Below, piece by piece: positions 1,186 to 64,000 of a DNA stretch of 64,000 nucleotides (the stretch's first letter is position 1; the number at the start of each line of letters is the position of its first letter). The DNA lies in IMG/VR virus record IMGVR_UViG_3300005529_000001, positions 186,001-250,000 of that record; one strand, written 5' to 3'. The notes beneath the pieces are model-generated. The model saw nothing but the letters and a program-made list of their open reading frames with translations. It was not told where the DNA came from and did not search any database. The position numbers and the translations under genes were made by a program.

Positions 1186-1192
1186 ATACTTA
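1186..1192 (+). promoter_or_regulatory. Putative phage late promoter ATACTTA
   Basis: 7 nt upstream of ATG 1200, no SD; motif recurs before structural genes. Confidence 0.6.
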
Positions 1193-1199
1193 GAGAGTC

Positions 1200-4100
1200 A
1201 TGAGGGTCAGTCTGGGCGTCCTGAGGGACTACGTCTCCAACCTGTTGGTTGAGAATCGCATCGATGATGCACGTGAAAAATACCCCGACATCGAAGAGGA
1301 TGTCTTCCAAAACCTCGTCGCGAACCAACCCGGCGGGTCGAACAACAAGTACCTGATGTGGTCAGCCAAGCAGGTTGACGACGAGGTAATGCCTGAAGAG
1401 GTCATCATGGCCATCAGGTTGTTTCACGACAACGTTCACCGTCTCAAGCAAAAGGACATCAACCAGTACGAGAGCGTCGAAGCCCTCGACACCGCCATTG
1501 ACGAGCTCCAGAAGAACAAGAGCAAGAGCCAAGAAGCCAAGCAAGCGAAGGCTGACACCCAGGTCATCTACAACGACGACAACTGGCTCGTTGTCCGCCC
1601 GTACACTGCTGACGCATCATGCAAGTACGGCGCAGGTTCAAAGTGGTGCATCTCGGCCACTGCATCTCGCAACTACTTCAACTCGTACTCAGAGACCAAC
1701 AACAAGTTCTACTTTGTCATCGACAAGAAATCAACTAGCAACACGCCCAACTCAAAGTTCGCTATCGCTATCGTTGCAGCGGGCTTGGCTGCCGCCGGTC
1801 GCGAGATCCAGGTCTACAACGCCTCCGATAGCTTGGTGTCTCTGAACACCGTAGCTAGCGCCGTCGGTAGCAAGTGGCCTGAAATCTGGGAAAAGATCCA
1901 AGCTCACGTCGCAGCAAACCCGAAGACCCGTGAGGTCGAAGACGCTGAGAGAGCGACTGAAGAGCATGTTGCTGCGTTGTTGAAAGGCGAGAAGCTTAGC
2001 GACCAAGCGATGAAGAAGGTCGCCAAGAGCGGCAAGCTATCAAACCAAGTCATCAAGAAGATCCTCGGACGTTACGAGAACTACACGGGACCCACCGATT
2101 ACCGTGATGAACGACAGGACATCATGAACTCGTTGTCCAGCCGCGCCAGTGAGATGGAATCTGAAGGGGCGATGGCTGTATTGAAGTGGATCTCAGAGAA
2201 CAGCGCCAACAGCTATTGGCGTACTTCCTACCTCGAACGCATGTTGGCAGCCGCTCCCTTCAAACCAGAAGACTTCCGTGAGATCGCTAAGACTAACGAT
2301 GAAGAGATCCTCGCTAACATCTTTAGTAACCCAGCAACTCCTGATGACGTAAAGCGAGTGATCTCTGATGCTGCAATGCGTTTCGTGTCGGAGTCAGCTA
2401 CCCGAAAAGTTTACTGGGAGCTCATCAAGTCGGGTGCCATCACCAAAGAGCAGATGGCACACGCGATGGAGATGGATAACAAGAGGGGCTCATACAGGTA
2501 CCTGACAAGCCAGATCCTCAACCATCCTGAAGACGTTCGCATGGAACCCGAGTTGGTCAAGATGTTAACCATCAACAACGCAGGAGAGTTCAAAAACCTG
2601 TTGCGGATCCCGAACGTCCCACACGATTTTGCTGTCAAGATCCTCAGCAAGCTGATGAGCAGCGAGAGCCTGAAGAAATACGACATGCTCGAGTTGCTCC
2701 GGACAACACCGTTGGGTCCGAAGCAGATCGAGAAGCTGTGGGCTGACTGGCCCCAAGCAACCGTCAGGACAGCGTTGCTACAAAACCCTGGGATCGGTGA
2801 GGGGAACGCTAACAAGTTCGCCAAAAGCAAGAACAGCGCGTACCGTTTTTCGGTTGCACACAACACCATCACTCCAGTTGATGCGCTCAACACACTCTCC
2901 AAAGACGAGTCAGTCTCAACCAGGTCAGCTGTCGCTGCTAACCCCAAGACATCACCCGAGACGCTGTACACGCTAGCAAAGGACCAAGCTGTTGCGGTCA
3001 GAGCGAGCGTCGCTAGCAACGCATCGTCACCGACCAACCTTGTACGTGCTCTGAAACGAGACTCAGACGACTTTGTCAGGAAAGCTGCTCGGAAGACGCT
3101 CAAAGCTTTGGACGTGACAGAAGCTTACATCGGGATGGCGATGGGCATGCGTGGTTTGCTCGTTGAAGAGCTGACCGATGATGATGTCACGCCTGACATC
3201 ATGAACCCAAGCTGGCGTGACATCATTCCTAGCACCATTGACAAGGAAGAGTTTGTCGCGGTCTTTCTGTTGCAGAACAATGGTAGCGCAACGCGAGAAG
3301 AGATCACCAAAGCGTACAAGGATTGGATGGGCAGCGCTGGTGGAGCGGGCGAGCTCTGGAAGACAAACAAGTGGAGTGACCAGATCATCCGCGGCATCAT
3401 GTCTCAGGGTAAGGGCTGGTTCTGGTCGCCTCCAGGCATCAACAAAGGTGCTCTGTTTCGTCTGACGCCAGCAGGTGCGAGCGCAGCTTTGGACATTATC
3501 AGGAAACTCGCTCACCTCACGAACCTATCTTCTCCCGTACAGATCACGTCTGCCAAGGCTCGACCAGGAAAGACGTACTTTGTCAAGGGCGCTGAAGAAG
3601 CCCTTGACGTCACGGGCATGGAGAAGGGTGACCTTGAGGTCGAAGAAGTTGCAGCAAACTACAACAACGAGCCCATCAAGACTGATGGGAAATACACGAA
3701 GCTGTCACCAAACCGCAGCTGGCGACAGAAGCGCCGCCAACGCAGCGTGAAGATGTTCAAGTACACCTCCCCAACAGGGGAAGTGAAGTACACTCGAGAG
3801 CTTCCCAAGGTCTCCGTCCCCAACAATGCCAAGGTACAGTTCATCAAGACATTCCACGGCCAGGCGACGAATGACAGGTATTCCACCAGCGAACCCAACC
3901 GAGCGATCGTCAAGTACAACGACAAGTACCTGCTTGTCAAGTTCCCGATGTGGGCAAAAGAGGGTGGTGCTGTTCCAGACAACTCCGAAAAGGAGACAAA
4001 CGTACCGCCGCCCGTCAGGAAGTCTCCTCCACCACGTGAGCTGACGGGCGAACCCGCCGCTGCACCAGCACGAACTGGTGGGGGTGAAGCTCCCGCAGCT

Positions 4101-4313
4101 CCCCGTGGACCCAAAGTCGGTTACAAGATCTACGGCCGCCACCGTGGGGCTCCCGCTCACACGCGTCTGAAGGGCCAAGCTTACGCTGCACCTACAGACA
4201 CCCAGTTCTCACCCGGAGAGCAAGCGACCATCCAGGTCGGTGCTGATGGCAAGCTGAAGGTCAAGAAAGTGGCTGGCGATCACGAACAGACGTGGGACCC
4301 CGTCGAGGGTTGA
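1200..4313 (+). CDS. Large multidomain protein with LRV/HEAT-like helical repeats and shared N-terminal motif; candidate virion internal protein
   Basis: N-term MRVSLGVLRDYVSNLLVE; YGAGSKWC domain; ~24-aa repeats VAHNTITPVDALNTLSKDESVSTRSAVAANPKTSPETLYTLAKDQAVAVRASVASN. Confidence 0.75.
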   Translation: MRVSLGVLRDYVSNLLVENRIDDAREKYPDIEEDVFQNLVANQPGGSNNKYLMWSAKQVDDEVMPEEVIMAIRLFHDNVHRLKQKDINQYESVEALDTAIDELQKNKSKSQEAKQAKADTQVIYNDDNWLVVRPYTADASCKYGAGSKWCISATASRNYFNSYSETNNKFYFVIDKKSTSNTPNSKFAIAIVAAGLAAAGREIQVYNASDSLVSLNTVASAVGSKWPEIWEKIQAHVAANPKTREVEDAERATEEHVAALLKGEKLSDQAMKKVAKSGKLSNQVIKKILGRYENYTGPTDYRDERQDIMNSLSSRASEMESEGAMAVLKWISENSANSYWRTSYLERMLAAAPFKPEDFREIAKTNDEEILANIFSNPATPDDVKRVISDAAMRFVSESATRKVYWELIKSGAITKEQMAHAMEMDNKRGSYRYLTSQILNHPEDVRMEPELVKMLTINNAGEFKNLLRIPNVPHDFAVKILSKLMSSESLKKYDMLELLRTTPLGPKQIEKLWADWPQATVRTALLQNPGIGEGNANKFAKSKNSAYRFSVAHNTITPVDALNTLSKDESVSTRSAVAANPKTSPETLYTLAKDQAVAVRASVASNASSPTNLVRALKRDSDDFVRKAARKTLKALDVTEAYIGMAMGMRGLLVEELTDDDVTPDIMNPSWRDIIPSTIDKEEFVAVFLLQNNGSATREEITKAYKDWMGSAGGAGELWKTNKWSDQIIRGIMSQGKGWFWSPPGINKGALFRLTPAGASAALDIIRKLAHLTNLSSPVQITSAKARPGKTYFVKGAEEALDVTGMEKGDLEVEEVAANYNNEPIKTDGKYTKLSPNRSWRQKRRQRSVKMFKYTSPTGEVKYTRELPKVSVPNNAKVQFIKTFHGQATNDRYSTSEPNRAIVKYNDKYLLVKFPMWAKEGGAVPDNSEKETNVPPPVRKSPPPRELTGEPAAAPARTGGGEAPAAPRGPKVGYKIYGRHRGAPAHTRLKGQAYAAPTDTQFSPGEQATIQVGADGKLKVKKVAGDHEQTWDPVEG

Positions 4314-43081: not shown

Positions 43082-44311
43082 TCAACACACGGGTTCGAGT
43101 CTCAGAGGGAACTTCTGCACGTAACCCGTGACCTTAACGTCTGTGATCTTTCTGACCTCGGGCTCTTCATCCAAGTGTACGTCAAGGAACAGAGCATCGT
43201 GCAATGTCCCAATCGCACATGTCTGGGGCGCAGCGTGTTCCAGCTGTTCGATCACTTGAGCAAACCCCAACAGGGTGACATCAACTCCCGTCGATTGAGC
43301 GTAGTAATTTATCAGAATGTTGTCCAGCGGTTCGTCAACGAGCACCCGGCGTCCGTATCGGTTCTCTAGGTAACCCGTCGATACGAACTGGGCCTTGATC
43401 CTCTTCAGGAGATCGTTGGTACGAAAGTACAGCTTCACCTGTTTGAGGAATGCCTTGAGTTCCTTTCCCTCCATTCCCAAGTGCTTTCCCAAGACATAGT
43501 CGGTCATCCCATATAACATCGCGATGACGGCGCCCTTGACGACCTTGCGTTCACGGTTCAGTTCACGTGCCATCATCCCGTACAGGTCAACTTCTTCACA
43601 CCTGCGGCCGAACTCATACAACAGGACACGGACCTCAAGCGCCGCAAAATCCAGAGCAAAAATCCGGCCCCTGTCACCGTGTCGAGACTTGATCAGATTA
43701 CGATGCTCTTTCTTGATCGTCAAGATCTGCGGACCGCTGTCAACGATCAGGCGTCCTGTTAGGGTGCCAAACCTGTTGTAACAGATGGGTTGAGCAAAAC
43801 CATTGGCGTCAGGCTGGAACGATTTGATCGCGGGCACGTTTCCCTCGCCTGCCAAAACGAGGTCACGCCAACGCTCTCCGTCGATGGCCATGGGCCTGAG
43901 GCTGCGGAAGACACGGTTTCCCGGCCCCCACACTGTCCTGTAATAATTCGTGGGAGCCGAAGCCATGGCAACCATCGCGGCATCGACCAGCCCTTTCACG
44001 AAGGCACGGTGTTCAGCAACAGGCATCACCTTTTGCCAGGGTACCGGCGTGTTTGCCAGTGAACCAGACAGCTGCGACATCACGTTGACAAATCGCTTGG
44101 GAGGCGAGACATCGAGCTTGTTCCCACCCAGTTTTAGCACCGTGTCAAAGCACCAGTCGCTCTCGTCTTTGATGTGACCGTTCAACCACCACATCTCGGG
44201 TGGGATCGTGTTCGACCACTCAAACGTCCCGTCGCCAACAACCAAGTGATTGTCAGTTCCGAGGAGACAGCTGTCAATGCACAGACGAGACACGAGATCA
44301 TTGTATTGCAA
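43082..44311 (-). CDS. Compact family A DNA polymerase (polymerase domain only)
   Basis: TLTGRL, motif A ALDFAALEVR, motif B RKVVKGAVIAMLYG, INYYAQSTGVD, motif C LHDA. Confidence 0.85.
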   Translation of the reverse strand: MQYNDLVSRLCIDSCLLGTDNHLVVGDGTFEWSNTIPPEMWWLNGHIKDESDWCFDTVLKLGGNKLDVSPPKRFVNVMSQLSGSLANTPVPWQKVMPVAEHRAFVKGLVDAAMVAMASAPTNYYRTVWGPGNRVFRSLRPMAIDGERWRDLVLAGEGNVPAIKSFQPDANGFAQPICYNRFGTLTGRLIVDSGPQILTIKKEHRNLIKSRHGDRGRIFALDFAALEVRVLLYEFGRRCEEVDLYGMMARELNRERKVVKGAVIAMLYGMTDYVLGKHLGMEGKELKAFLKQVKLYFRTNDLLKRIKAQFVSTGYLENRYGRRVLVDEPLDNILINYYAQSTGVDVTLLGFAQVIEQLEHAAPQTCAIGTLHDALFLDVHLDEEPEVRKITDVKVTGYVQKFPLRLEPVC

Positions 44312-56970: not shown

Positions 56971-57462
56971 TCAGTCAGCTGCGGGTGGAAACAGGTCAGG
57001 ACGAGATTTCATCCATTCATCAGCTTCTTTAGCGAACTGTTCGACTTTCTCGGTCACCGTGTAGAGCAGCGAGTTCCCCCGTTTGCCTACGTCCTTGACC
57101 AAGCCTCGAACCAGGACGCCCTGGGCCAACGGTCCCGTCACATCGTTTGGGACTTCTTCATAGTTCCCAAGGAAACGACCCGGGGTCTCCGGGTCTTGGA
57201 CGAGTTGGCCGTGTTCGTTACGTTGCCACTGCATCTTCATTCTCGTTGCAGGGGCCCAGTACGAAACGTTGCTCGTTGGCTTGAAGCTAACGGGATCCTT
57301 GCCTTCAAGGCTATGAACTTGCTGCATCACCTCGGGACGGGTCAGCGGACGCCCAGCATGCCACAGAACATAACAGATCATGTGGACCTTGTCTCCGGGA
57401 TAGCCCCTGTCACCGACAGCTTCCCGGATCACGGACTTCAGCTCTGCGAGGGTCAGCTGCAT
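56971..57462 (-). CDS. Protein with shared N-terminal motif
   Basis: MQLTLAELKSVIREA; ATACATA (57468-57474) lies 5 nt upstream. Confidence 0.72.
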   Translation of the reverse strand: MQLTLAELKSVIREAVGDRGYPGDKVHMICYVLWHAGRPLTRPEVMQQVHSLEGKDPVSFKPTSNVSYWAPATRMKMQWQRNEHGQLVQDPETPGRFLGNYEEVPNDVTGPLAQGVLVRGLVKDVGKRGNSLLYTVTEKVEQFAKEADEWMKSRPDLFPPAAD

Positions 57463-57492
57463 GCTCATATGTATCGCGTGTGTCAGAAACGA

Positions 57493-57529
57493 CAAGCCCC
57501 GGGCATCGTTTCAGACGAGCCGGGACTTG
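57493..57529 (-). terminator. Terminator-like hairpin after tail tube gene
   Basis: CAAGTCCCGG...CCGGGGCTTG imperfect long stem followed by TCGTTTCT. Confidence 0.55.
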
Positions 57530-57551
57530 GAGGCAGGACCGCCGCTGTCTA

Positions 57552-58109
57552 CCGGTGACAGGAGAACCAGCGGCGCCCGCACCTGGCCGGAGTGCCAGGA
57601 ATCAGAACTGCAGAACGGCGTTGTCGAAGCGCAGCGTCAGGCTGATCTCAGCCAGGGTACCGTCTTCATAGGTGAGCTCGCCGAAGTTAGCTTCGGTTAT
57701 CCAGGCGCCCTTGATGTCCCAGAGCTCGACAACGGTGCCGACCGGGTCAAGCAGCTTCAGCTGGATGTCACGCTTGTAGAAGTCAGCGTAGCCAGCGCGG
57801 CCCGAGACAGTCTCCAGGGTCAGGCGGATCCACTCCATGACCTGCTGCGCGCCCGAGGGAGCGATCGGGTCATAGAGCGTCACAGCCAGGGTATTGAACT
57901 TCGTCAATCCCGCAAGGTAACGACGGAAGTTGATGAACGGCACCTCGACCTCTTCCGTGGTCACGGTCGGGCGTGCAGTGGTCTTCATGATGTAGGCGTC
58001 GATTCCCTCGATCATGAGCACCCAACGGTTCTTCCGCTTGGGTTCAAACTTGTTTGGAAGCATCGACGTTACGTCGAGTGTCTCAGCCATTTTTCTCTCC
58101 TGTCACCGG
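57552..58109. repeat. 14-bp perfect inverted repeat flanking tail tube gene
   Basis: ccggtgacaggaga (57552-57565) vs tctcctgtcaccgg (58096-58109). Confidence 0.9.
57602..58090 (-). CDS. Tail tube protein (T4 gp19-like)
   Basis: FEPKRKNRW, RPTV..EEVEVPFIN..RYLAG..F..L.VTLYD, LLDPVG..VELW...GAWI...NFGEL.Y. Confidence 0.9.
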   Translation of the reverse strand: MAETLDVTSMLPNKFEPKRKNRWVLMIEGIDAYIMKTTARPTVTTEEVEVPFINFRRYLAGLTKFNTLAVTLYDPIAPSGAQQVMEWIRLTLETVSGRAGYADFYKRDIQLKLLDPVGTVVELWDIKGAWITEANFGELTYEDGTLAEISLTLRFDNAVLQF

Positions 58110-58118
58110 GTTCGATCG

Positions 58119-58125
58119 TAACTAT
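58119..58125 (-). promoter_or_regulatory. Putative late promoter ATAGTTA
   Basis: Upstream of tube leader and SD. Confidence 0.55.
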
Positions 58126-58156
58126 CGGCCTTGCGAGTTCGCTGCCCCTTGCGGGA

Positions 58157-58564
58157 TCAGTTCTGTCCGTACATCGCCGCCTCGGCGGTCTGGACAAATT
58201 GCTTGATTCGTTTCAAATAGTTGGCAGCACTGTCTTCGTCGCCGATGCTGACGGCGTTCTCGAGACGTTCGACAGAAGCCTTCAGCATCCCGACCGTCTT
58301 GCCGACCTTTTCTAGGCGAGGGTTACCCTTGCTGATCTTCTTCTCGCTGCCGGAGTAGTTGAACAGGTCCTCATTCATGACGCTGTGCTCAATGAGCGCA
58401 TCATCATATTCTTCATCAACGATCTGTTGCAACTGTTCTAGCGTTACGATGGGCCCGCTGATCTGCACGGGCTCACGGTAAACGGGCACGTCTTCGCCAA
58501 GGTCCAGCTTACGCCGGACAGCTTCGCGGATGATGCTTCGGAGCTGGTTCTTTGTCACCTTCAT
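58157..58564 (-). CDS. Protein with shared N-terminal motif (plus an internal copy)
   Basis: MKVTKNQLRSIIREA; internal IVTLEQLQQIVDEE; TGATTTA at 58575-58581. Confidence 0.75.
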   Translation of the reverse strand: MKVTKNQLRSIIREAVRRKLDLGEDVPVYREPVQISGPIVTLEQLQQIVDEEYDDALIEHSVMNEDLFNYSGSEKKISKGNPRLEKVGKTVGMLKASVERLENAVSIGDEDSAANYLKRIKQFVQTAEAAMYGQN

Positions 58565-58578
58565 GAAGCTACCCTAAA

Positions 58579-61500
58579 TCACCCCTGTTGCGAGATGTTG
58601 TTCGTCACAACGAAGTCCAACGAGACGTACTCGAGCGACTTGGTGGGCTGGACGAAGATCTTCCCGCGGATGGTGTTGTTCTCGATGTCGAGCTGCGTCG
58701 TTGTCGAGGAGTCGATGACGACCTTGAAACGCTGCAGGCCAGCCTGGGCCTGGATCTTCTGCAAGACGGGGGTGACCGCCGCAGAGAACCGAGCCAGGGT
58801 TGCGTCACGGTTCTGCTCGAACAGGATGGTGTTGGCAATGTCACGGACCTGGCGACGGATCTCGATCAGGAGGCGCCGCACGTTGACACGGTCAAGGGCC
58901 GAAGCAGCTTGCTGGAGCGTCTTCTGTCCCCAGACCACCACGCCACCCTTCGGGTTGGTGCCGCCCGAAGCGTTGCCCGGGAAGGCGACCAACGGGTTGA
59001 CGTTGGCGTCGTAAAGGGCGTCCATGTTGGTCTTCGACAGCTTGACACGAGCCTCGAGGGTCGTCTGCAACGCACCACGAGTGAAGCCTGCGGGAGCGAA
59101 CCATGGGTGACCGACCGCGTCGTTGAGAGCGAGAGCGCCCAGGACGGCGACAGACGGGGGAGCAACGACGTTGTTGCCCGTGTTCGGATCGGGCATCACG
59201 ACGTCTGGGAAGTACGCTGCACCGAAGCTGCTGTTCACTGACCGCAGCAGGAAGTTCTGCAGCGTGTATGTCACGCTGGGCAGCTGCGTGTCGGTGGTGA
59301 CCAGCTGGTCGTTGTTATCATACTGGTCGATGTCCATCAAGAACATGCAATCAAAGCGCTGTTCACAAGCCGCCAATGCTGCGTCAGTGACGACCGGGTG
59401 CCTGATGCCGGGAACGGCGAGCAACATGATGTCCACGTTCGTGGTGTCGCTCATGATGTTGAGGCCAGCGTTGTAAGCTGACACTGTCGATCCGAGGTTG
59501 AAACCACGGTTCGATGCATTCATGTCATCTTCAACGGCGGTGTTCGTCAGCTGGCGCTGGTCGGGATCAAACAGGTTGGTCCCATCGAAACCTCCCTGGA
59601 CCATGAACGTCCACTTGAGGAAGCGCCTGTTGGCCTGGACGAAGTCGCTCGGCAACAGCGCACGGGTTGCAGCGGAGTTGTTCGTTGCAATGTTCCCGTT
59701 GCGGACATAGACTGCGTTCACCCACTGTGTCGGGTCGGCGATGCCAGCCGAGCTGGTGACGACCTGGATGTTCAGCAAGCTGAAGGCGTTGAAGTTGAAC
59801 CTGTCGGCGTCCATGATGGCGCCGTTGACGGTGGGTGCTCCGGGCTTGCCACCGTTCTCATACCCAATGCGGACGTTCTGCGCATCGGTGCGGAACTCGG
59901 GCAAGAACTTTGCAAAAGCATGCATTGACTGGTTTGCCAGCGTGCTCAAGTTCGGGGTTGACACACTAGCAACGTGCTCAAACTGCATGCCCCAGTACAG
60001 CAAGGGGTTGACCTGCAGCTTGGCGCCAGAGCCCTGCGTGATGTTCTGCCGCAGCGGGACCGGCGGCTCGATGACTTGGCTTGCCCAGGTGGTGCTGTTC
60101 AGCGCGATCTCGCTAGAGCTACCGCTGATCAACGAGTTTGCAGGCTGTGCCAGGCAACCGCCAGCTGTCACCAAGTGATGGATGCCACGAAGACCGACAG
60201 GCAACACCGTCGGATCGACCTGGCCGAGGTCAGTTGACGTATCCATCTCGATGCGGATGTAGTTCGAAGCGTTCGGGTACTGGCCATCAACGACCAGCTT
60301 CTGTGCGGTCGGTCCACGGTCAAAGTCAAAGAACGCGTGGGCGTCACCGATGACAGCAGCGATGTACCGTGAGTCGCTTGGGTTCAGCGTCAGGCCGCGG
60401 AACTGCTCGAGGTAGACGGGTGCTCCGTCGGTGTCACCCCACTGGCGGACGACCAGGTCAAAGGTGCCGTACTGGTTCAACGGATCGGTCGAGAGCGCGA
60501 TGTTCTCGATGCTGATCTTGTAAAGCCTGCTAACGTTGAAGCCGTCATCAAGGGCGTGGACGCGGAACAGGTTGTGGGGCTTGCCGCCGAACGGTTGTGA
60601 GACAACCCACGGTGACGTTGCGTGCTCAAACCGGTCACGGAAGTCCTCATAGTCGGGGACGGTCGATGAACCGTTGTCATACTGCAACGAGCTGGTCAAG
60701 ATGAACGCTGCAAACTCAGCGCCCGGAACGTTTGCAGACGCTGCGCCGGCGCCGAACGAGGAGCTGACGAGACCCGATCCGGTGACCACTGCCTGCGCAG
60801 GGTGGATATCATAGTGGCTGTAGAGGTAGTGACCTGCCTGTTGCAGGTTGTCAGGGTTGGTGTTCAGGACGTTCGCAAAGTAGTTTGGCGACGTCATGTC
60901 GAACGACGCGGTGATCACGTTCGGGAACAGTGGGTTCGTTCCCATGAGACCGTTAAGGAAGAGGACGAAGTCTTGCTTGGCGATCGACCCAGCGAACAAC
61001 GTCACGTCACCGATGCTTGCACCGTTGTTGTCAGTCGCTACTGCAGTTGCAGGCGGAGCAACGTTGGTCTGCGCTCCCGTGAGCGGGAACGAAGCTGACA
61101 GCGTCAGGATGACGCCTGAGGCGGCCATGATCATGCCGCGGACGATCGGGACACACGAACCGGACGTTGACGTTGTCTGGATGCCCGCAGACGAGAAGAA
61201 CGTTGAGCCGGCCGACTCGGACATGAAAGCGCCCAAGAAGTACGTACGACCCGACAGGTAGCTGGTCCGGCCTGGTTGGACGGGAGTTGCTCCCGTCGAT
61301 GACGTCGGGTTAGCATAAGGGTTTGGGCTCAGCTGACCATTGTTGTTGGGATCAGGTTCCTTTTCGCCGACTGTCCAGCCTGCGCCTGTCACGCCACCTG
61401 TTGCACTGTTGGGACCCGAGGGTTGGCTAGCGAGACCCTGCCGTGCTTGTCCCTGGCCAACGCCGAGCACCCTGACGTAGGTCAGCGCTTGCGCGTTGCG

Positions 61501-61725
61501 GAGCCACTCTGTCACCGCAAGCGGGCCAAACTTCCGGCCATCAGTCTGACCAAACTTTCCATAGAAGTCGTTGACCAGACCAACAGTGACAGGAACGAAT
61601 GCTGGGCCCTTCAAAGAAGTGCCAACAACGCCTGCTGGGGTGCCTGTCGGGGTGATCGCTAGCGGTTGAGAGAGATCGATCTCTGTCGTCGATACTCCTG
61701 GCGCGCCGAACTTGAGCTGTGACAT
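58579..61725 (-). CDS. Tail sheath protein 1
   Basis: FGAPGVSTTEIDLS N-term; WFAPAGFTRG, VVVWGQKTLQ..SALDRVNVRRLL, LEYVSLDF. Confidence 0.95.
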   Translation of the reverse strand: MSQLKFGAPGVSTTEIDLSQPLAITPTGTPAGVVGTSLKGPAFVPVTVGLVNDFYGKFGQTDGRKFGPLAVTEWLRNAQALTYVRVLGVGQGQARQGLASQPSGPNSATGGVTGAGWTVGEKEPDPNNNGQLSPNPYANPTSSTGATPVQPGRTSYLSGRTYFLGAFMSESAGSTFFSSAGIQTTSTSGSCVPIVRGMIMAASGVILTLSASFPLTGAQTNVAPPATAVATDNNGASIGDVTLFAGSIAKQDFVLFLNGLMGTNPLFPNVITASFDMTSPNYFANVLNTNPDNLQQAGHYLYSHYDIHPAQAVVTGSGLVSSSFGAGAASANVPGAEFAAFILTSSLQYDNGSSTVPDYEDFRDRFEHATSPWVVSQPFGGKPHNLFRVHALDDGFNVSRLYKISIENIALSTDPLNQYGTFDLVVRQWGDTDGAPVYLEQFRGLTLNPSDSRYIAAVIGDAHAFFDFDRGPTAQKLVVDGQYPNASNYIRIEMDTSTDLGQVDPTVLPVGLRGIHHLVTAGGCLAQPANSLISGSSSEIALNSTTWASQVIEPPVPLRQNITQGSGAKLQVNPLLYWGMQFEHVASVSTPNLSTLANQSMHAFAKFLPEFRTDAQNVRIGYENGGKPGAPTVNGAIMDADRFNFNAFSLLNIQVVTSSAGIADPTQWVNAVYVRNGNIATNNSAATRALLPSDFVQANRRFLKWTFMVQGGFDGTNLFDPDQRQLTNTAVEDDMNASNRGFNLGSTVSAYNAGLNIMSDTTNVDIMLLAVPGIRHPVVTDAALAACEQRFDCMFLMDIDQYDNNDQLVTTDTQLPSVTYTLQNFLLRSVNSSFGAAYFPDVVMPDPNTGNNVVAPPSVAVLGALALNDAVGHPWFAPAGFTRGALQTTLEARVKLSKTNMDALYDANVNPLVAFPGNASGGTNPKGGVVVWGQKTLQQAASALDRVNVRRLLIEIRRQVRDIANTILFEQNRDATLARFSAAVTPVLQKIQAQAGLQRFKVVIDSSTTTQLDIENNTIRGKIFVQPTKSLEYVSLDFVVTNNISQQG

Positions 61726-61834: not shown

Positions 61835-64000
61835 TCACACGAACTGGACGCCGCTGTTCGTGATGATGAAGTCAACTGCGATGAACTCAACCACGCGGGT
61901 CGGGACCACGACGATCCGACCGTTCATCTTGTACTGGTCAACGTCAGCTTGCGAGTTGTTGGTCGAGTTGCAGATGACCTGGAAGGCTTCGATGCCTGCC
62001 TGGGTCTGGATCAGTCCCAGTTGCAACACTGCCTGTGCAGTGAACTTGTTCTGGGTGTCGGGCGTGTTCTGCTCGAACTCCAGTTGCAGAGCGATGTTGC
62101 TGATGATGCGCTTGACCTCCAGCAACAGACGCCTAACGTTGACCCGGTCAAGAGCCGAGGGCTTGGCTTGCAGTGTCTTCTGGCCGAAGATGACGAATCC
62201 CTGTCGTGGGAACGTTGCGATCGGGTTGATGCGGCTAGAGTACAGCGTGTCCCGGTCGCTCGAGTTGAGACGCACGCCCACGTTGACAACGAAGTCGAGC
62301 GCTGCGCGGTTGAAGCCCGCAGGAGCGAACCATGGGTAACCGATCTTGTCGTTGAAGCCCAGGGCTCCCAACGCTGCGATCGAAGCGGGCACCTTGACAC
62401 GACGGTTGTTGACCACGTCCTGGATGAAGACATCCGGGAAGTAGGTTCCCATGTAGTTGTTGTCGATAGCACGGGTGTTGAGACCGACGCTGGTCTGACC
62501 CACGTCTGCACGGACCGCGCTACCGTTTGCCCCGATGGTGGTCGAGTACAATCTGTTCTGTAGCTCGTCATAGTTTACCAGGTCCATGACGTAGAAGGCC
62601 AAGCCGTAGTCACGGACATGGCTTCCCGCGTAATCCGTCAGGAAGGGCTCTCGGATGCCCGGCATCGCCAGGATGTTGTGGTTGACCTGCATCGGGTCAG
62701 TCATGATGGTGAGGGCCGTGACGTACGAGGAGACGTTGGAGTTGCTCTGGCCCGTTCCGTTCATGTTGGCAGCAAACCCAGGCGGGATGAAGCCCGGGAA
62801 CGCACCGCCAGTATCACCCAACAGGTTCGAATCGAACGACGTTGACTTGTCGTTCATGCGGCTAGCGTCAGGATCCAAGAAGTTGACACCGTCCCAGCCG
62901 CCGGCCAAGAAGGTCGAGAACTTCAGGTAAGGAGCAAAGCGGTTGAACTGCTGTGCTGTTCCCTTGGCGAGCAAGGTTGCCAGGGTGACACGCCGGCTTG
63001 CCGTCTTCTGGTTGTTGAGCTCGACCGGATCGATGTAAACGTACGTCGCGCCATCCAGCACGCCGTTTCTGATGTAAGCTGCTTCACGCATGTGACCGTC
63101 GATCGACGCCGTCAAGCCGCTGAGGCTCGTCCCATCAAAGACGTCGGTGAAGTCGTTCGAAAGAGCAACCTTGGCCAGCGTGAACTTGTTGTCACAGAAC
63201 TGGTCTGCGCCTGCCCCGGTGACGAACGTGTCCAAGCCAGAGCAACCCAGGAACTGGGTGTAAGAGCTGATGCAGTTGTTTGCCACCGTCTCAACGTTCG
63301 GGTTGAGTGGGATGTCGAGACGCTCGAACTGGACGCCCCAGTACAACGGCGGGTAAGAGATCTCGGTGGGAGCGGGGTTGCCGAACCAGGACGTTGACGT
63401 CGGGCGGTTTCCCTTGGTCACCTTGGTGCGGAACGGAACTGGGGGCAAGACCGAACCAGTCAACGCGTTTGCGCTGCCCGAGGTCACGCCATACAGACGA
63501 GTGAAAGCTGCCTGGAGAGCGTTGCTTGCACCTGCCGACAGGACGCCGTTTGACGCACCATCAGTCAAGCTATCGTTGGTCTTCAACAGTGCCGCGCCGC
63601 GGAAACCGAAGGGCAAGCACTGCGGCGGCACTCGAGCCTGGTCAACTGCGTCAGTTGGGATGACGCGGATGTAAGCAGACTGGTTCTGGTACTTGCCACG
63701 TGACACGACACGTTGCTCGGTGCTGATCGTTGCATCAAAGTTGTAGTAGACCTTGCGATCGCCGATCACGTTAGCGATGTAGTTTGCAGCCGTCGGGTCA
63801 AGGCTCAGGTTGTTGAACTGCTCCAGGACGTTCGGGTTGATGTCGGTGTCATCCCAGCTGCGGACCTGCAACGCAAAGGTTCCGTACTTGTAGCTGTCAA
63901 CGGTCGATGCTTGCAGGTTGACGATGCTGATCTTGAAGAGGTTGTTGGCGTACTGGCCGTCATCGAGCGCTTCGACACGGAACAGGTCGTACTCCACCTT
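61835..64000 (-). CDS. Tail sheath protein 2 (5' part outside window)
   Basis: WFAPAGFNRA, FVIFGQKTLQ..SALDRVNVRRLL, VEFIAVDF; frame open to window end. Confidence 0.95.
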   Translation of the reverse strand, partial: KVEYDLFRVEALDDGQYANNLFKISIVNLQASTVDSYKYGTFALQVRSWDDTDINPNVLEQFNNLSLDPTAANYIANVIGDRKVYYNFDATISTEQRVVSRGKYQNQSAYIRVIPTDAVDQARVPPQCLPFGFRGAALLKTNDSLTDGASNGVLSAGASNALQAAFTRLYGVTSGSANALTGSVLPPVPFRTKVTKGNRPTSTSWFGNPAPTEISYPPLYWGVQFERLDIPLNPNVETVANNCISSYTQFLGCSGLDTFVTGAGADQFCDNKFTLAKVALSNDFTDVFDGTSLSGLTASIDGHMREAAYIRNGVLDGATYVYIDPVELNNQKTASRRVTLATLLAKGTAQQFNRFAPYLKFSTFLAGGWDGVNFLDPDASRMNDKSTSFDSNLLGDTGGAFPGFIPPGFAANMNGTGQSNSNVSSYVTALTIMTDPMQVNHNILAMPGIREPFLTDYAGSHVRDYGLAFYVMDLVNYDELQNRLYSTTIGANGSAVRADVGQTSVGLNTRAIDNNYMGTYFPDVFIQDVVNNRRVKVPASIAALGALGFNDKIGYPWFAPAGFNRAALDFVVNVGVRLNSSDRDTLYSSRINPIATFPRQGFVIFGQKTLQAKPSALDRVNVRRLLLEVKRIISNIALQLEFEQNTPDTQNKFTAQAVLQLGLIQTQAGIEAFQVICNSTNNSQADVDQYKMNGRIVVVPTRVVEFIAVDFIITNSGVQFV

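What the first reader, a model, noticed from the sequence alone, without database searches (positions are those of the whole stretch)
57493..58125. Tail-tube mRNA 5' leader (with RBS) is perfectly complementary to a 14-nt element displayed in its own 3' UTR stem-loop
Seen: the leader CCGGUGACAGGAGA (58109-58096, contains SD AGGAG, 5 nt before AUG) is the exact complement of UCUCCUGUCACCGG (57565-57552), 36 nt past the stop; a G-U pair extends it to 15. The 3' arm lies inside the ~20-nt loop of a 7-bp stem (GCCGCUG/CAGCGGC, 57541-57574), between another hairpin (57582-57599) and a terminator-like hairpin (57493-57529). The putative promoter (58119-58125) would start transcription just before the 5' arm, so the arm is most of the leader. 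A 14-nt perfect match at exactly these two places is very unlikely by chance. Inference: a closed-loop or kissing interaction that shuts off translation of completed transcripts (dosing tube subunits), protects both ends, or forms an RNase III site. A DNA-level recombination role is less likely, as no recombinase is nearby.
Basis: partly seen in the sequence, partly recalled or inferred. Interest (0 to 1): 0.8.

Follow-up and report, generated by a model that had tools for sequence, protein, structure and literature searches.

The report
Anti-leader RNA hairpin behind tail-tube gene
Just after the tail-tube gene of this uncultured soil jumbo phage lies a conserved RNA hairpin whose loop is complementary to the gene's own ribosome-binding leader, so it probably tunes how much tube protein is made, acting either within the same mRNA or as a small separate RNA.

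Summary
On its own it is not significant: 24% of shuffled windows hold such a repeat. Relatives make it real. In 21 distinct related loci (tube protein 81-100% identical) the 3' arm lies in the loop of a hairpin (H2). Fourteen of H2's 15 stem pairs show compensatory changes. The loop core CCTGTCACC never varies and always matches the leader core GGTGACAGG. One C:G to A:T double change (L046) keeps the inter-arm pairing. H2 was found only in loci that have this leader.

The cis "closed loop" reading is only partly supported. In about 9 relatives an inserted ORF (Zn-finger/HNH-like, apparently mobile) pushes H2 0.8-2.1 kb from the tube stop. There, H2 is preceded by a late-promoter-like motif in 8 of 9 loci, against 0 of 14 where H2 is adjacent. 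So H2 probably has to be transcribed, and it may act in trans.

Best reading: an antisense, anti-Shine-Dalgarno RNA that limits tube translation. The closest known systems are the icaR 5'-3' UTR pairing and the OppZ/CarZ autoregulatory 3'-UTR sRNAs. No RNA data could be obtained, so the function is inferred.

The parts
58119..58125 (-). Late-promoter-like motif ATAGTTA, 28 nt before the tube ATG
   Evidence: ATASTTA occurs 7 times in the window against 1.6 expected. It lies before several structural genes. ATAnTTA lies 16-49 nt before the tube ATG in 93 of 126 distinct relatives and in 0 of 126 control windows. The transcription start a few nt downstream is inferred by analogy with T4 late promoters and is not shown.
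58096..58109 (-). 5' arm: leader CCGGTGACAGGAGA, including the SD AGGAGA (58101-58096)
   Evidence: The core GGTGACAGG is invariant in all 21 loci that carry H2. It is also kept in several relatives where no H2 was found.
57602..58090 (-). Tail tube gene (162 aa)
   Evidence: phrog_4542 tail tube, E 3.6e-29. Pfam Phage_T4_gp19, 29.9 bits against a cut-off of 28.2.
57582..57599 (-). H1: small 6-bp hairpin directly after the stop codon
   Evidence: Fold. It is present with compensatory changes in most adjacent-type relatives and absent in L004.
57533..57580 (-). H2: 13-bp stem with a 2-nt bulge and a loop of about 20 nt that displays the anti-leader sequence (3' arm 57552-57565)
   Evidence: Fold. 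RNAalifold and pair counts give 96-98% of cells paired, 14 of 15 pairs with changes on both sides against 2-4 in slid controls, and 0 of 500 shuffles as high. Covariance model R1 scores the window copy at 71 bits and finds the element in 21 distinct loci.
57484..57528 (-). Terminator-like hairpin (57528-57494) plus T-rich tract (57493-57484)
   Evidence: Fold. The stem is conserved with compensatory changes. A GC-rich hairpin with a T tract follows H2 in the distal-type loci too.
57462..57475 (-). Boundary of the next transcription unit: promoter-like GATACATA (57475-57468) 5 nt before the ATG (57462) of the downstream 163-aa gene
   Evidence: The same place in relatives holds GATAGTTA, GATACTTA or a close variant, 5-8 nt before the ATG, with no SD. 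This implies that H2 and the terminator end the tube unit.

Best explanation
H2 is a conserved, structured antisense RNA element directed at the tail-tube mRNA leader. It is transcribed either as the 3' UTR of the tube mRNA (the window and 13 relatives) or, where an inserted ORF has separated it from the tube gene, from its own late-promoter-like motif as a small transcript of roughly 90-110 nt ending at the same terminator. Its exposed loop (core CCUGUCACC, extended to UCUCCUGUCACCGG in the window) pairs with the leader (core GGUGACAGG, extended to CCGGUGACAGGAGA). The leader is predicted to be unstructured and to lie within a few nt of the 5' end. The duplex covers part or all of the Shine-Dalgarno sequence. 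It should therefore compete with 30S binding and lower tube translation in proportion to the amount of finished transcript, which amounts to negative feedback or dosing. The pairing may occur within one mRNA or between molecules. Shown here: the sequence, the hairpin with covariation, the invariant loop, the complementarity in all 21 loci, one compensatory change, and the promoter-motif association. Inferred: that the RNAs exist with these ends, that they pair in vivo, and that the result is repression.
For: The complementarity is exact. The H2 stem covaries while an 11-nt loop block is the longest invariant stretch of the 3' UTR alignment. Ten base pairs are kept in 20-21 of 21 distinct loci, and L046 shows a C:G to A:T double change. 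Cognate leader/3'UTR duplexes score -29 to -33.5 kcal/mol in the 11 element-bearing loci scored. The other 122 loci form a continuum no stronger than -22.6. Net cofold gain after opening H2 is -8 to -20 kcal/mol. The long-range duplex appears in both the MFE and the centroid of the whole mRNA. The tube leader is the only strong target of the loop among the window's start regions. H2 is retained with an intact loop when it is displaced 0.8-2.1 kb. It then has a promoter-like motif 8-29 nt upstream in 8 of 9 loci, against 0 of 14 when adjacent. H2 was found only in loci with this leader.
Against: There are no RNA data at all, so the transcript ends, the pairing and the effect are all unobserved. 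The leader core is invariant among H2 loci, so only one compensatory event supports the intermolecular helix. Mismatches at the outer pair are uncompensated in L283, L286 and L001. The leader motif persists in relatives with no H2 within reach (L005, L082, L292; L006 was checked over 13 kb). The leader is therefore constrained by something else as well, and H2 is dispensable. In more distant members the SD-proximal part of the duplex is lost (L020, L036, L295), which weakens a pure SD-masking model. Fourteen base pairs cannot form inside a closed 20-nt loop unless the stem opens. Part of the loop is weakly self-paired in the MFE. Repressing a very abundant structural protein is not an obvious need.
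Confidence: 0.5

Rival explanations
1. Strict cis closed loop for stability. The 3' loop pairs with the extreme 5' end of the same mRNA. This shields the 5' end and a 5'-UTR cleavage site from 5'-end-dependent RNases and anchors the 3' end. Translation continues in dynamic competition. The model is the 14-bp 5'/3'-UTR interaction of B. subtilis hbs.
For: The 5' arm begins only about 2-4 nt after the inferred transcription start. The 3' arm lies in the same transcription unit in the window and 13 relatives. The whole-mRNA fold favours the end-to-end duplex. There is a precedent in PMC5737220.
Against: The duplex covers the SD, which would block the ribosomes that such an mRNA needs. In 9 relatives H2 lies behind another ORF and a terminator-like hairpin and has its own promoter-like motif, which a purely intramolecular role does not explain. 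The transcript ends are unknown.
Confidence: 0.12
2. Both arms are binding sites for one protein. This could be a DNA-binding regulator that loops an operator at +3..+17 to a second site 530 bp downstream. It could instead be an RNA-binding repressor that recognises the quasi-palindromic core CCnGUnACnGG in both leader and loop. On this view the complementarity is a by-product.
For: The 11-nt core is 4/5 self-complementary (read directly). A dimeric protein could therefore read either orientation, and leader and loop share 8 of 11 letters in the same sense. The leader motif is conserved even where H2 is absent. An operator plus a distal site is a classical looping layout (established knowledge: lac O1/O2).
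Against: A DNA site needs no flanking stem, yet 14 of 15 H2 stem pairs show compensatory changes. This is the signature of selection on a folded RNA. The palindromic skeleton is broken in several loci (L001, L283, L286, L046) while complementarity is kept. The distance between the two sites varies from 0.5 to 2.6 kb. No candidate regulator was identified.
Confidence: 0.15
3. The duplex, in cis or in trans, is mainly a nuclease entry site of the RNase III type, as in icaR, and triggers irreversible decay of the tube mRNA rather than reversible masking.
For: icaR shows that an SD/3'-UTR duplex can be an RNase III substrate (PMC3868564). The duplex reaches 14-15 bp in the window subclade.
Against: The conserved core is only 10-11 bp, shorter than usual RNase III substrates (established knowledge: about two helical turns). 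No data on cleavage, and the host is unknown.
Confidence: 0.08
4. H2 is a conserved 3'-end structure with another role (processing signal, exonuclease barrier or termination aid). Its match to the leader has no function: it arose from a copied piece of leader or by chance and was inherited.
For: The match in a single genome is not significant (24% of shuffles). All carriers belong to one clade, so co-occurrence with the leader is confounded by descent. Some clade members lack H2.
Against: The loop block stays invariant over 21 distinct loci whose stems and flanks have diverged (mean column identity 59-66%). A stability hairpin does not need an invariant 11-nt loop. The chance that a given conserved 11-mer is complementary to a 25-nt leader is about 6e-6 (own arithmetic). 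L046 shows a compensatory change.
Confidence: 0.1
5. The two arms form a DNA-level inverted repeat for site-specific inversion or another recombination of the tube gene.
For: Perfect 14-bp inverted repeats flank one gene.
Against: The tube gene has the same orientation relative to sheath and baseplate genes in all roughly 180 loci examined. No joints or inverted forms appear in contigs of three DNA runs, although contigs drop rare variants. No recombinase was seen among the neighbouring genes. The stem covariation points to RNA.
Confidence: 0.01

Closest known systems
icaR mRNA 5'-UTR/3'-UTR pairing in Staphylococcus aureus (Ruiz de los Mozos et al. 2013, PMC3868564)
   Same: An anti-SD motif (UCCCCUG there, UCUCCUG... 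here) in the 3' UTR of an mRNA is complementary to that mRNA's own Shine-Dalgarno region. The expected results are a block of the initiation complex and possible nuclease entry.
   Different: icaR has a long (>100 nt) 3' UTR in a bacterial regulator gene, and its function was shown by toeprinting, RNase III assays and mutants. Here the gene is a phage structural gene and the motif sits in the loop of a covarying hairpin next to the terminator. The conserved pairing lies mostly upstream of the SD. The element can also sit on a separate transcription unit. Nothing has been tested experimentally.
Autoregulatory 3'-UTR-derived sRNAs OppZ and CarZ of Vibrio cholerae (Hoyos et al. 2020, PMC7398697)
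   Same: An RNA that shares the 3' end and terminator of an mRNA base-pairs with its own transcript to inhibit translation, which gives post-transcriptional negative feedback. The hairpin-plus-terminator layout of H2, and its survival as an apparently independent small unit, fit a diffusible sRNA.
   Different: OppZ and CarZ are released by RNase E and need Hfq. Here the processing, the chaperone and the host are all unknown. The pairing region is a hairpin loop rather than a single-stranded seed at the 5' end of the sRNA.
hbs mRNA 5'/3'-UTR interaction in Bacillus subtilis (Braun et al. 2017, PMC5737220)
   Same: A 14-bp long-range pairing between the two UTRs of a short, highly expressed mRNA.
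   Different: In hbs the duplex overlaps an RNase Y site, not the SD, and it stabilises the mRNA. Here the duplex reaches into the SD.
Phage antisense RNAs that mask ribosome-binding sites, such as the c4 RNA of P1/P7 and sar of P22 (from my own knowledge, not checked here)
   Same: Small phage-encoded RNAs with loop-displayed antisense sequences block an RBS. P1 c4 is made from the same operon as its target.
   Different: Those RNAs control lysogeny and immunity genes. A virion structural gene as the target and a 3'-UTR location would be new. There is no sequence or Rfam relationship.

Membership tests
icaR-type 5'-3' UTR anti-SD interaction | The 3' UTR of the same mRNA contains a motif complementary to the mRNA's own SD region | tested here: met
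   14 nt perfect plus one G.U pair, covering AGGAGA. Ten to fifteen base pairs are kept in 21 loci. In distant members only the first 2-3 nt of the SD are covered.
icaR-type 5'-3' UTR anti-SD interaction | Both arms lie on one transcript (intramolecular pairing) | tested here: inconclusive
   This is plausible in the window: promoter motif, gene, H2, terminator. In 9 relatives H2 lies 0.8-2.1 kb away, behind an ORF with a terminator-like hairpin, and has its own promoter-like motif. No RNA data.
icaR-type 5'-3' UTR anti-SD interaction | Pairing blocks the translation initiation complex and creates an RNase III substrate | not testable with these tools
   This needs toeprinting, RNase III assays and mutants.
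Autoregulatory 3'-UTR-derived sRNA (OppZ/CarZ type) | A stable small RNA that shares the mRNA's terminator accumulates | not testable with these tools
   Only the layout fits: a stable hairpin plus a terminator hairpin (z = -2.8). No RNA run was listed.
Autoregulatory 3'-UTR-derived sRNA (OppZ/CarZ type) | The sRNA base-pairs with the translation initiation region of its own parent transcript | tested here: met
   Sequence-level complementarity is conserved, with one compensatory change. The tube leader is the only strong target in the window.
Autoregulatory 3'-UTR-derived sRNA (OppZ/CarZ type) | RNase E processing and Hfq dependence | not testable with these tools
   The host is unknown and there are no RNA data.
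hbs-type stabilising 5'/3' UTR pairing | The duplex overlaps an endonuclease site in the 5' UTR and raises mRNA stability | not testable with these tools
   Only the length (14 bp) and the geometry are alike. Here the duplex overlaps the SD.
Any curated RNA family (Rfam 15) | A match to a covariance model at or near its gathering score | tested here: not met
   Only two chance-level matches (11.5-11.9 bits against gathering scores of 45-53.5), and neither lies on H2.
Invertible DNA segment | Inverted repeats flank a segment that is found in both orientations, with a recombinase nearby | tested here: not met
   Inverted repeats are present, but only one orientation occurs in about 180 loci. There are no joints in contigs of 3 DNA runs and no recombinase among the neighbours.

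The most novel reading that the evidence does not exclude
A family of jumbo phages carries a portable autoregulatory module: a small anti-leader RNA that doses the tail-tube protein. Normally it rides as the tube mRNA's 3' UTR. When a mobile endonuclease-like gene inserts between the stop codon and the hairpin, the hairpin is expressed from a late promoter that overlaps the inserted gene's stop codon. The feedback loop therefore survives as a trans-acting sRNA. This would be the first 3'-UTR-type autoregulatory sRNA known to control a virion structural protein. It would also be a natural example of a cis-to-trans conversion of an RNA regulator.
Probability: 0.3. Interest if true: 0.75.

Novelty: new variant of a known kind. 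Interest (0 to 1): 0.62.

Why it matters
Post-transcriptional control by 3' UTRs and 3'-UTR-derived sRNAs is established in a handful of bacterial genes. It is almost unexplored in phages, and unknown for virion structural genes, whose stoichiometry is usually attributed to promoter and RBS strength. Here comparative data alone define a new structured RNA family (21 distinct members, strong covariation) with a specific, conserved predicted target. A natural experiment, displacement by an inserted ORF, also suggests that the RNA works as a diffusible regulator. The module is small: a leader of about 25 nt and a hairpin-terminator of about 90 nt. It can be tested in a heterologous reporter without culturing the phage. 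If confirmed, it would give both a mechanism for dosing tail components and a compact orthogonal feedback part.

Tried and rejected
1. Significance of the repeat in the single sequence: rejected, because 24% of shuffles hold a 14-nt inverted repeat within 1 kb.

2. DNA similarity to cultured phages: none. The tube protein is at most 45% identical to those of Microcystis, Flavobacterium and Rhodothermus phages.

3. Rfam: nothing.

4. Exact 14-mer scans of IMG/VR: almost all hits were chance matches in unrelated contigs. The only useful outcome was a longer flank for the L006 contig (L306).

5. Search for a compensatory loop in L006, whose leader core is GGTGACTGG: no H2 within about 13 kb.

6. 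General rule "tube leaders pair with their own 3' UTRs" across all clades: not supported. The median cognate duplex is -13.7 kcal/mol against -13.1 for all pairs. Isolated 9-12-nt matches (L060, L057, L090, L068, L129) are at chance level or lack a hairpin context.

7. The R1 hit in L041 on the opposite strand, inside coding sequence, was dismissed as a false positive.

8. Other targets of the loop in the window: GGTGACAGG also lies inside the downstream gene (57406-57414) and inside gene 43082-44311, but it is not conserved in relatives.

9. RNA evidence: no RNA run was listed. DNA contigs showed no joints.

10. Family of the inserted ORF: no Pfam, PHROG or PDB match of note. HNH-like and Zn-finger motifs were seen only by eye in the translation.

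11. Antiterminator idea (leader pairing frees an H2 strand to disrupt the terminator): the cofold keeps the terminator intact.

Full report
**1. What is in the sequence**

The gene at 57602-58090 (minus strand) is a T4 gp19-type tail tube protein (phrog_4542, E 3.6e-29; Pfam PF06841). Upstream of it lie a 135-aa ORF and two sheath-like genes. A baseplate-hub gene lies further downstream. The exact tube protein is on record on a contig of 369,506 bp, and the window matches an IMG/VR contig of 369,475 bp. The source is therefore an uncultured soil jumbo myophage. It has no DNA match among cultured phages.

On the coding strand the leader reads ATAGTTA (58125-58119), 9 nt, CCGGTGACAGGAGA (58109-58096), GAAAA, ATG. 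The exact reverse complement lies at 57565-57552, 36 nt after the stop, and a G.U pair extends it. The 3' UTR folds into three hairpins (-58.9 kcal/mol, z -2.8):

- H1 (57599-57582).
- H2 (57580-57533): a 13-bp stem with a 2-nt bulge, whose loop of about 20 nt carries the 3' arm.
- A terminator-like hairpin (57528-57494) followed by a T-rich tract.

**2. Is it more than chance?**

Not by itself. In 100 dinucleotide shuffles of the window, 24 contained at least one 14-nt perfect inverted repeat within 1 kb. The case rests on relatives.

**3. Relatives**

I collected loci as follows:

- 80 IMG/VR loci and 80 metagenome loci with tube proteins 70-99% identical.
- 24 further loci through exact-protein look-ups of close homologues.

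Eleven distinct 3' UTRs directly resemble the window's (alignment A1). Their mean column identity is only 66%. Even so, the block TCCTGTCACCG is invariant and is the longest invariant stretch.

The H2 stem changes extensively but stays paired. RNAalifold and explicit pair counts give 98% of cells paired. Thirteen pairs show changes on both sides, against 0-3 in slid controls, and 0 of 500 shuffles reach this.

A covariance model of H2 (R1) then found the element in 21 distinct loci. Their tube identity goes down to 81%. On that set, 14 of 15 stem pairs show compensatory changes and 96.5% of cells are paired (this alignment is fitted to the model, but the MAFFT alignments A1 and A2 agree). H2 is therefore a genuine, selected RNA hairpin with an invariant loop. 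It has no Rfam family.

**4. Leader-loop relationship**

All 21 H2 loci have the leader core GGTGACAGG. H2 was not found in any of the roughly 115 distinct loci with other leaders, although this co-occurrence is confounded by common descent.

I anchored the two cores and read outward:

- Ten pairs, (C/A)GGTGACAGG with CCTGTCACC(G/T), are formed in 20-21 of 21 loci.
- The next outer pair is formed in 16 of 21.
- The three SD-proximal pairs (AGA/TCT) are formed in 13-17 of 21.
- L046 has leader A where the others have C, and loop T where the others have G. This is a compensatory C:G to A:T change.
- Outer-pair mismatches in L283, L286 and L001 are not compensated.

The energies point the same way:

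- Cognate leader/3'-UTR duplexes in the 11 element-bearing loci scored are -29 to -33.5 kcal/mol. The other 122 loci form a continuum no stronger than -22.6.
- After paying to open H2, the net cofold gain is -8 to -20 kcal/mol.
- The 629-nt mRNA model places the 5'-3' duplex in both the MFE and the centroid.
- Among the window's start regions, no other leader is a comparable target of the loop. The next best scores -21.

**5. The finding that changes the interpretation**

Several relatives first looked element-negative, because a different sequence follows the tube stop. They do have H2, further downstream on the same strand:

- +783 to +970 nt in L286, L010, L020, L085, L036 and L295/L297.
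- +1769 nt in L011, where the stem is degenerate.
- +2117 nt in L046.

The intervening DNA is mostly one ORF of about 270 aa. It has an N-terminal C2H2-like finger and a C-terminal CxxC...HH...N...CxxCH...H pattern. It looks like an HNH homing endonuclease, but no library confirmed this. A terminator-like hairpin precedes it, directly after the tube stop.

The same tube protein (P0017) occurs with this ORF (L295) and without it (L298-L300, where H2 begins 3 nt after the stop). The ORF is therefore a presence/absence insertion between the stop codon and H2.

Where H2 is displaced, a late-promoter-like heptamer ([A/C]TA[G/C][T/G/A]TA) lies 8-29 nt before the H2 stem in 8 of 9 loci. Where H2 is adjacent to the tube gene, the motif is absent in all 14. 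In the four ORF-bearing loci examined, the ORF's TAG stop codon lies inside this heptamer.

The heptamer is the same kind of motif that precedes the tube gene in 93 of 126 distinct relatives, against 0 of 126 control windows. It is also over-represented in the window, before structural genes.

The simplest reading is that H2 has to be transcribed. When it is cut off from the tube mRNA it is expressed as its own small unit. This favours an RNA that can act in trans. It does not exclude pairing in cis in the window's arrangement, nor read-through transcripts in the others.

**6. Mechanism**

My committed model is as follows. H2 is an antisense RNA against the tube leader. Its loop nucleates pairing with the leader, which is unstructured (-2.6 kcal/mol alone) and lies near the 5' end. 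The duplex runs into or across the SD, so it competes with 30S binding. Because H2 is made in proportion to tube transcripts, the result is negative feedback on tube synthesis.

Steps shown: the anatomy, the conservation, the covariation of the hairpin, the conserved complementarity with one compensatory change, and the promoter-motif association.

Steps inferred: the transcript ends, the pairing in vivo, the direction of the effect, and cis versus trans.

Caveats:

- The leader motif is also conserved in clade members without detectable H2 (L005, L082, L292; L006 over 13 kb). The leader therefore has another constraint, and H2 is an accessory.
- The only two leader-core variants in the clade (L006, L083) are in loci without detected H2. 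This is suggestive but not significant (p about 0.08, own arithmetic).
- In distant members the pairing barely touches the SD.

Rival explanations are listed separately, with probabilities: end protection (hbs-like), an RNase III entry site, one protein that binds both arms (the core CCnGTnACnGG is quasi-palindromic), a non-functional match, and DNA inversion.

**7. Comparison with known systems**

The logic is that of icaR (PMC3868564) and of the autoregulatory 3'-UTR sRNAs OppZ and CarZ (PMC7398697). The geometry recalls hbs (PMC5737220). The sequence-level features of those classes are met. The biochemical ones cannot be tested here.

I found no paper describing such an element in a phage structural gene, though the search was limited. 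I therefore rate it a new variant of a known kind. It is a new RNA family in jumbo phages with an unusual natural cis/trans polymorphism.

**8. Limits**

No transcript data exist for these uncultured phages. DNA contigs only show the absence of rearranged forms, and weakly. One variant read there (57547 G>A on the plus strand) turns an H2 G-C pair into G.U and so preserves the structure. All H2 carriers belong to one clade.

Noticed in passing
window 57462-57475 (-) and 1186-1202 (+): The late-promoter-like motifs GATACATA and GATACTTA sit only 5-7 nt before an ATG, with no Shine-Dalgarno sequence. The genes are the 163-aa gene downstream of the tube and the 1037-aa gene at 1200-4313. This suggests leaderless or near-leaderless late mRNAs. 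The same layout is conserved before the downstream gene in relatives.
   Followed up: partly
L286:2100-2909, L010, L020, L085, L295:3522-4352 (relatives); absent from the window: An ORF of about 270 aa with Zn-finger and HNH-like motifs is inserted between the tube stop codon and H2. Phages with identical tube proteins differ in whether they carry it (L295 against L298). Its TAG stop codon lies inside a promoter-like heptamer. No Pfam, PHROG or PDB family match.
   Followed up: partly
window 58579-61725 (-) and 61835-63997 (-): Two large sheath-like genes lie in tandem (1048 aa and at least 720 aa). Both match tail-sheath PHROGs in their C-terminal parts. This is an unusual duplication for a contractile tail.
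   Followed up: no
L142, L147, L149 (AT-rich clade, tube about 72% identical), 13-16 nt after the tube stop: A 10-12-nt perfect complement of that clade's own, different leader (GGAGAAAATTT, including the SD) sits single-stranded between the stop codon and the terminator hairpin. It could be an independent analogue of the anti-leader arrangement. However, the sequence is AT-rich and self-complementary, and only 3-4 related loci show it.
   Followed up: partly
L129, about 40-77 nt after the tube stop: Just after the terminator lies a degenerate inverted copy, about 30 nt long, of the whole promoter-leader region (duplex -21.4 kcal/mol). Sister loci lack it.
   Followed up: no
L001, L286, L036, downstream of the H2 terminator: The next gene is preceded by CTAAGTA(C/T), the reverse complement of the (G/A)TACTTA promoter-like motif, instead of the forward motif. 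This could be a convergent promoter or a coincidence.
   Followed up: no
window 58129-58158 (+ strand coordinates): Two direct copies of CGCAAGG-containing 12-mers, 18 nt apart, lie just upstream of the tube promoter motif. One copy is also an 11-nt perfect inverted repeat with 57907-57917 inside the tube ORF. It is not conserved in L081 or L002 and is at chance level.
   Followed up: partly
window 3181-3226 (+): A 13-nt perfect inverted repeat (ATGATGTCACGCC) with a 20-nt spacer lies inside the 1037-aa gene. It is the only other inverted repeat of 13 nt or more within 1 kb in the window.
   Followed up: no
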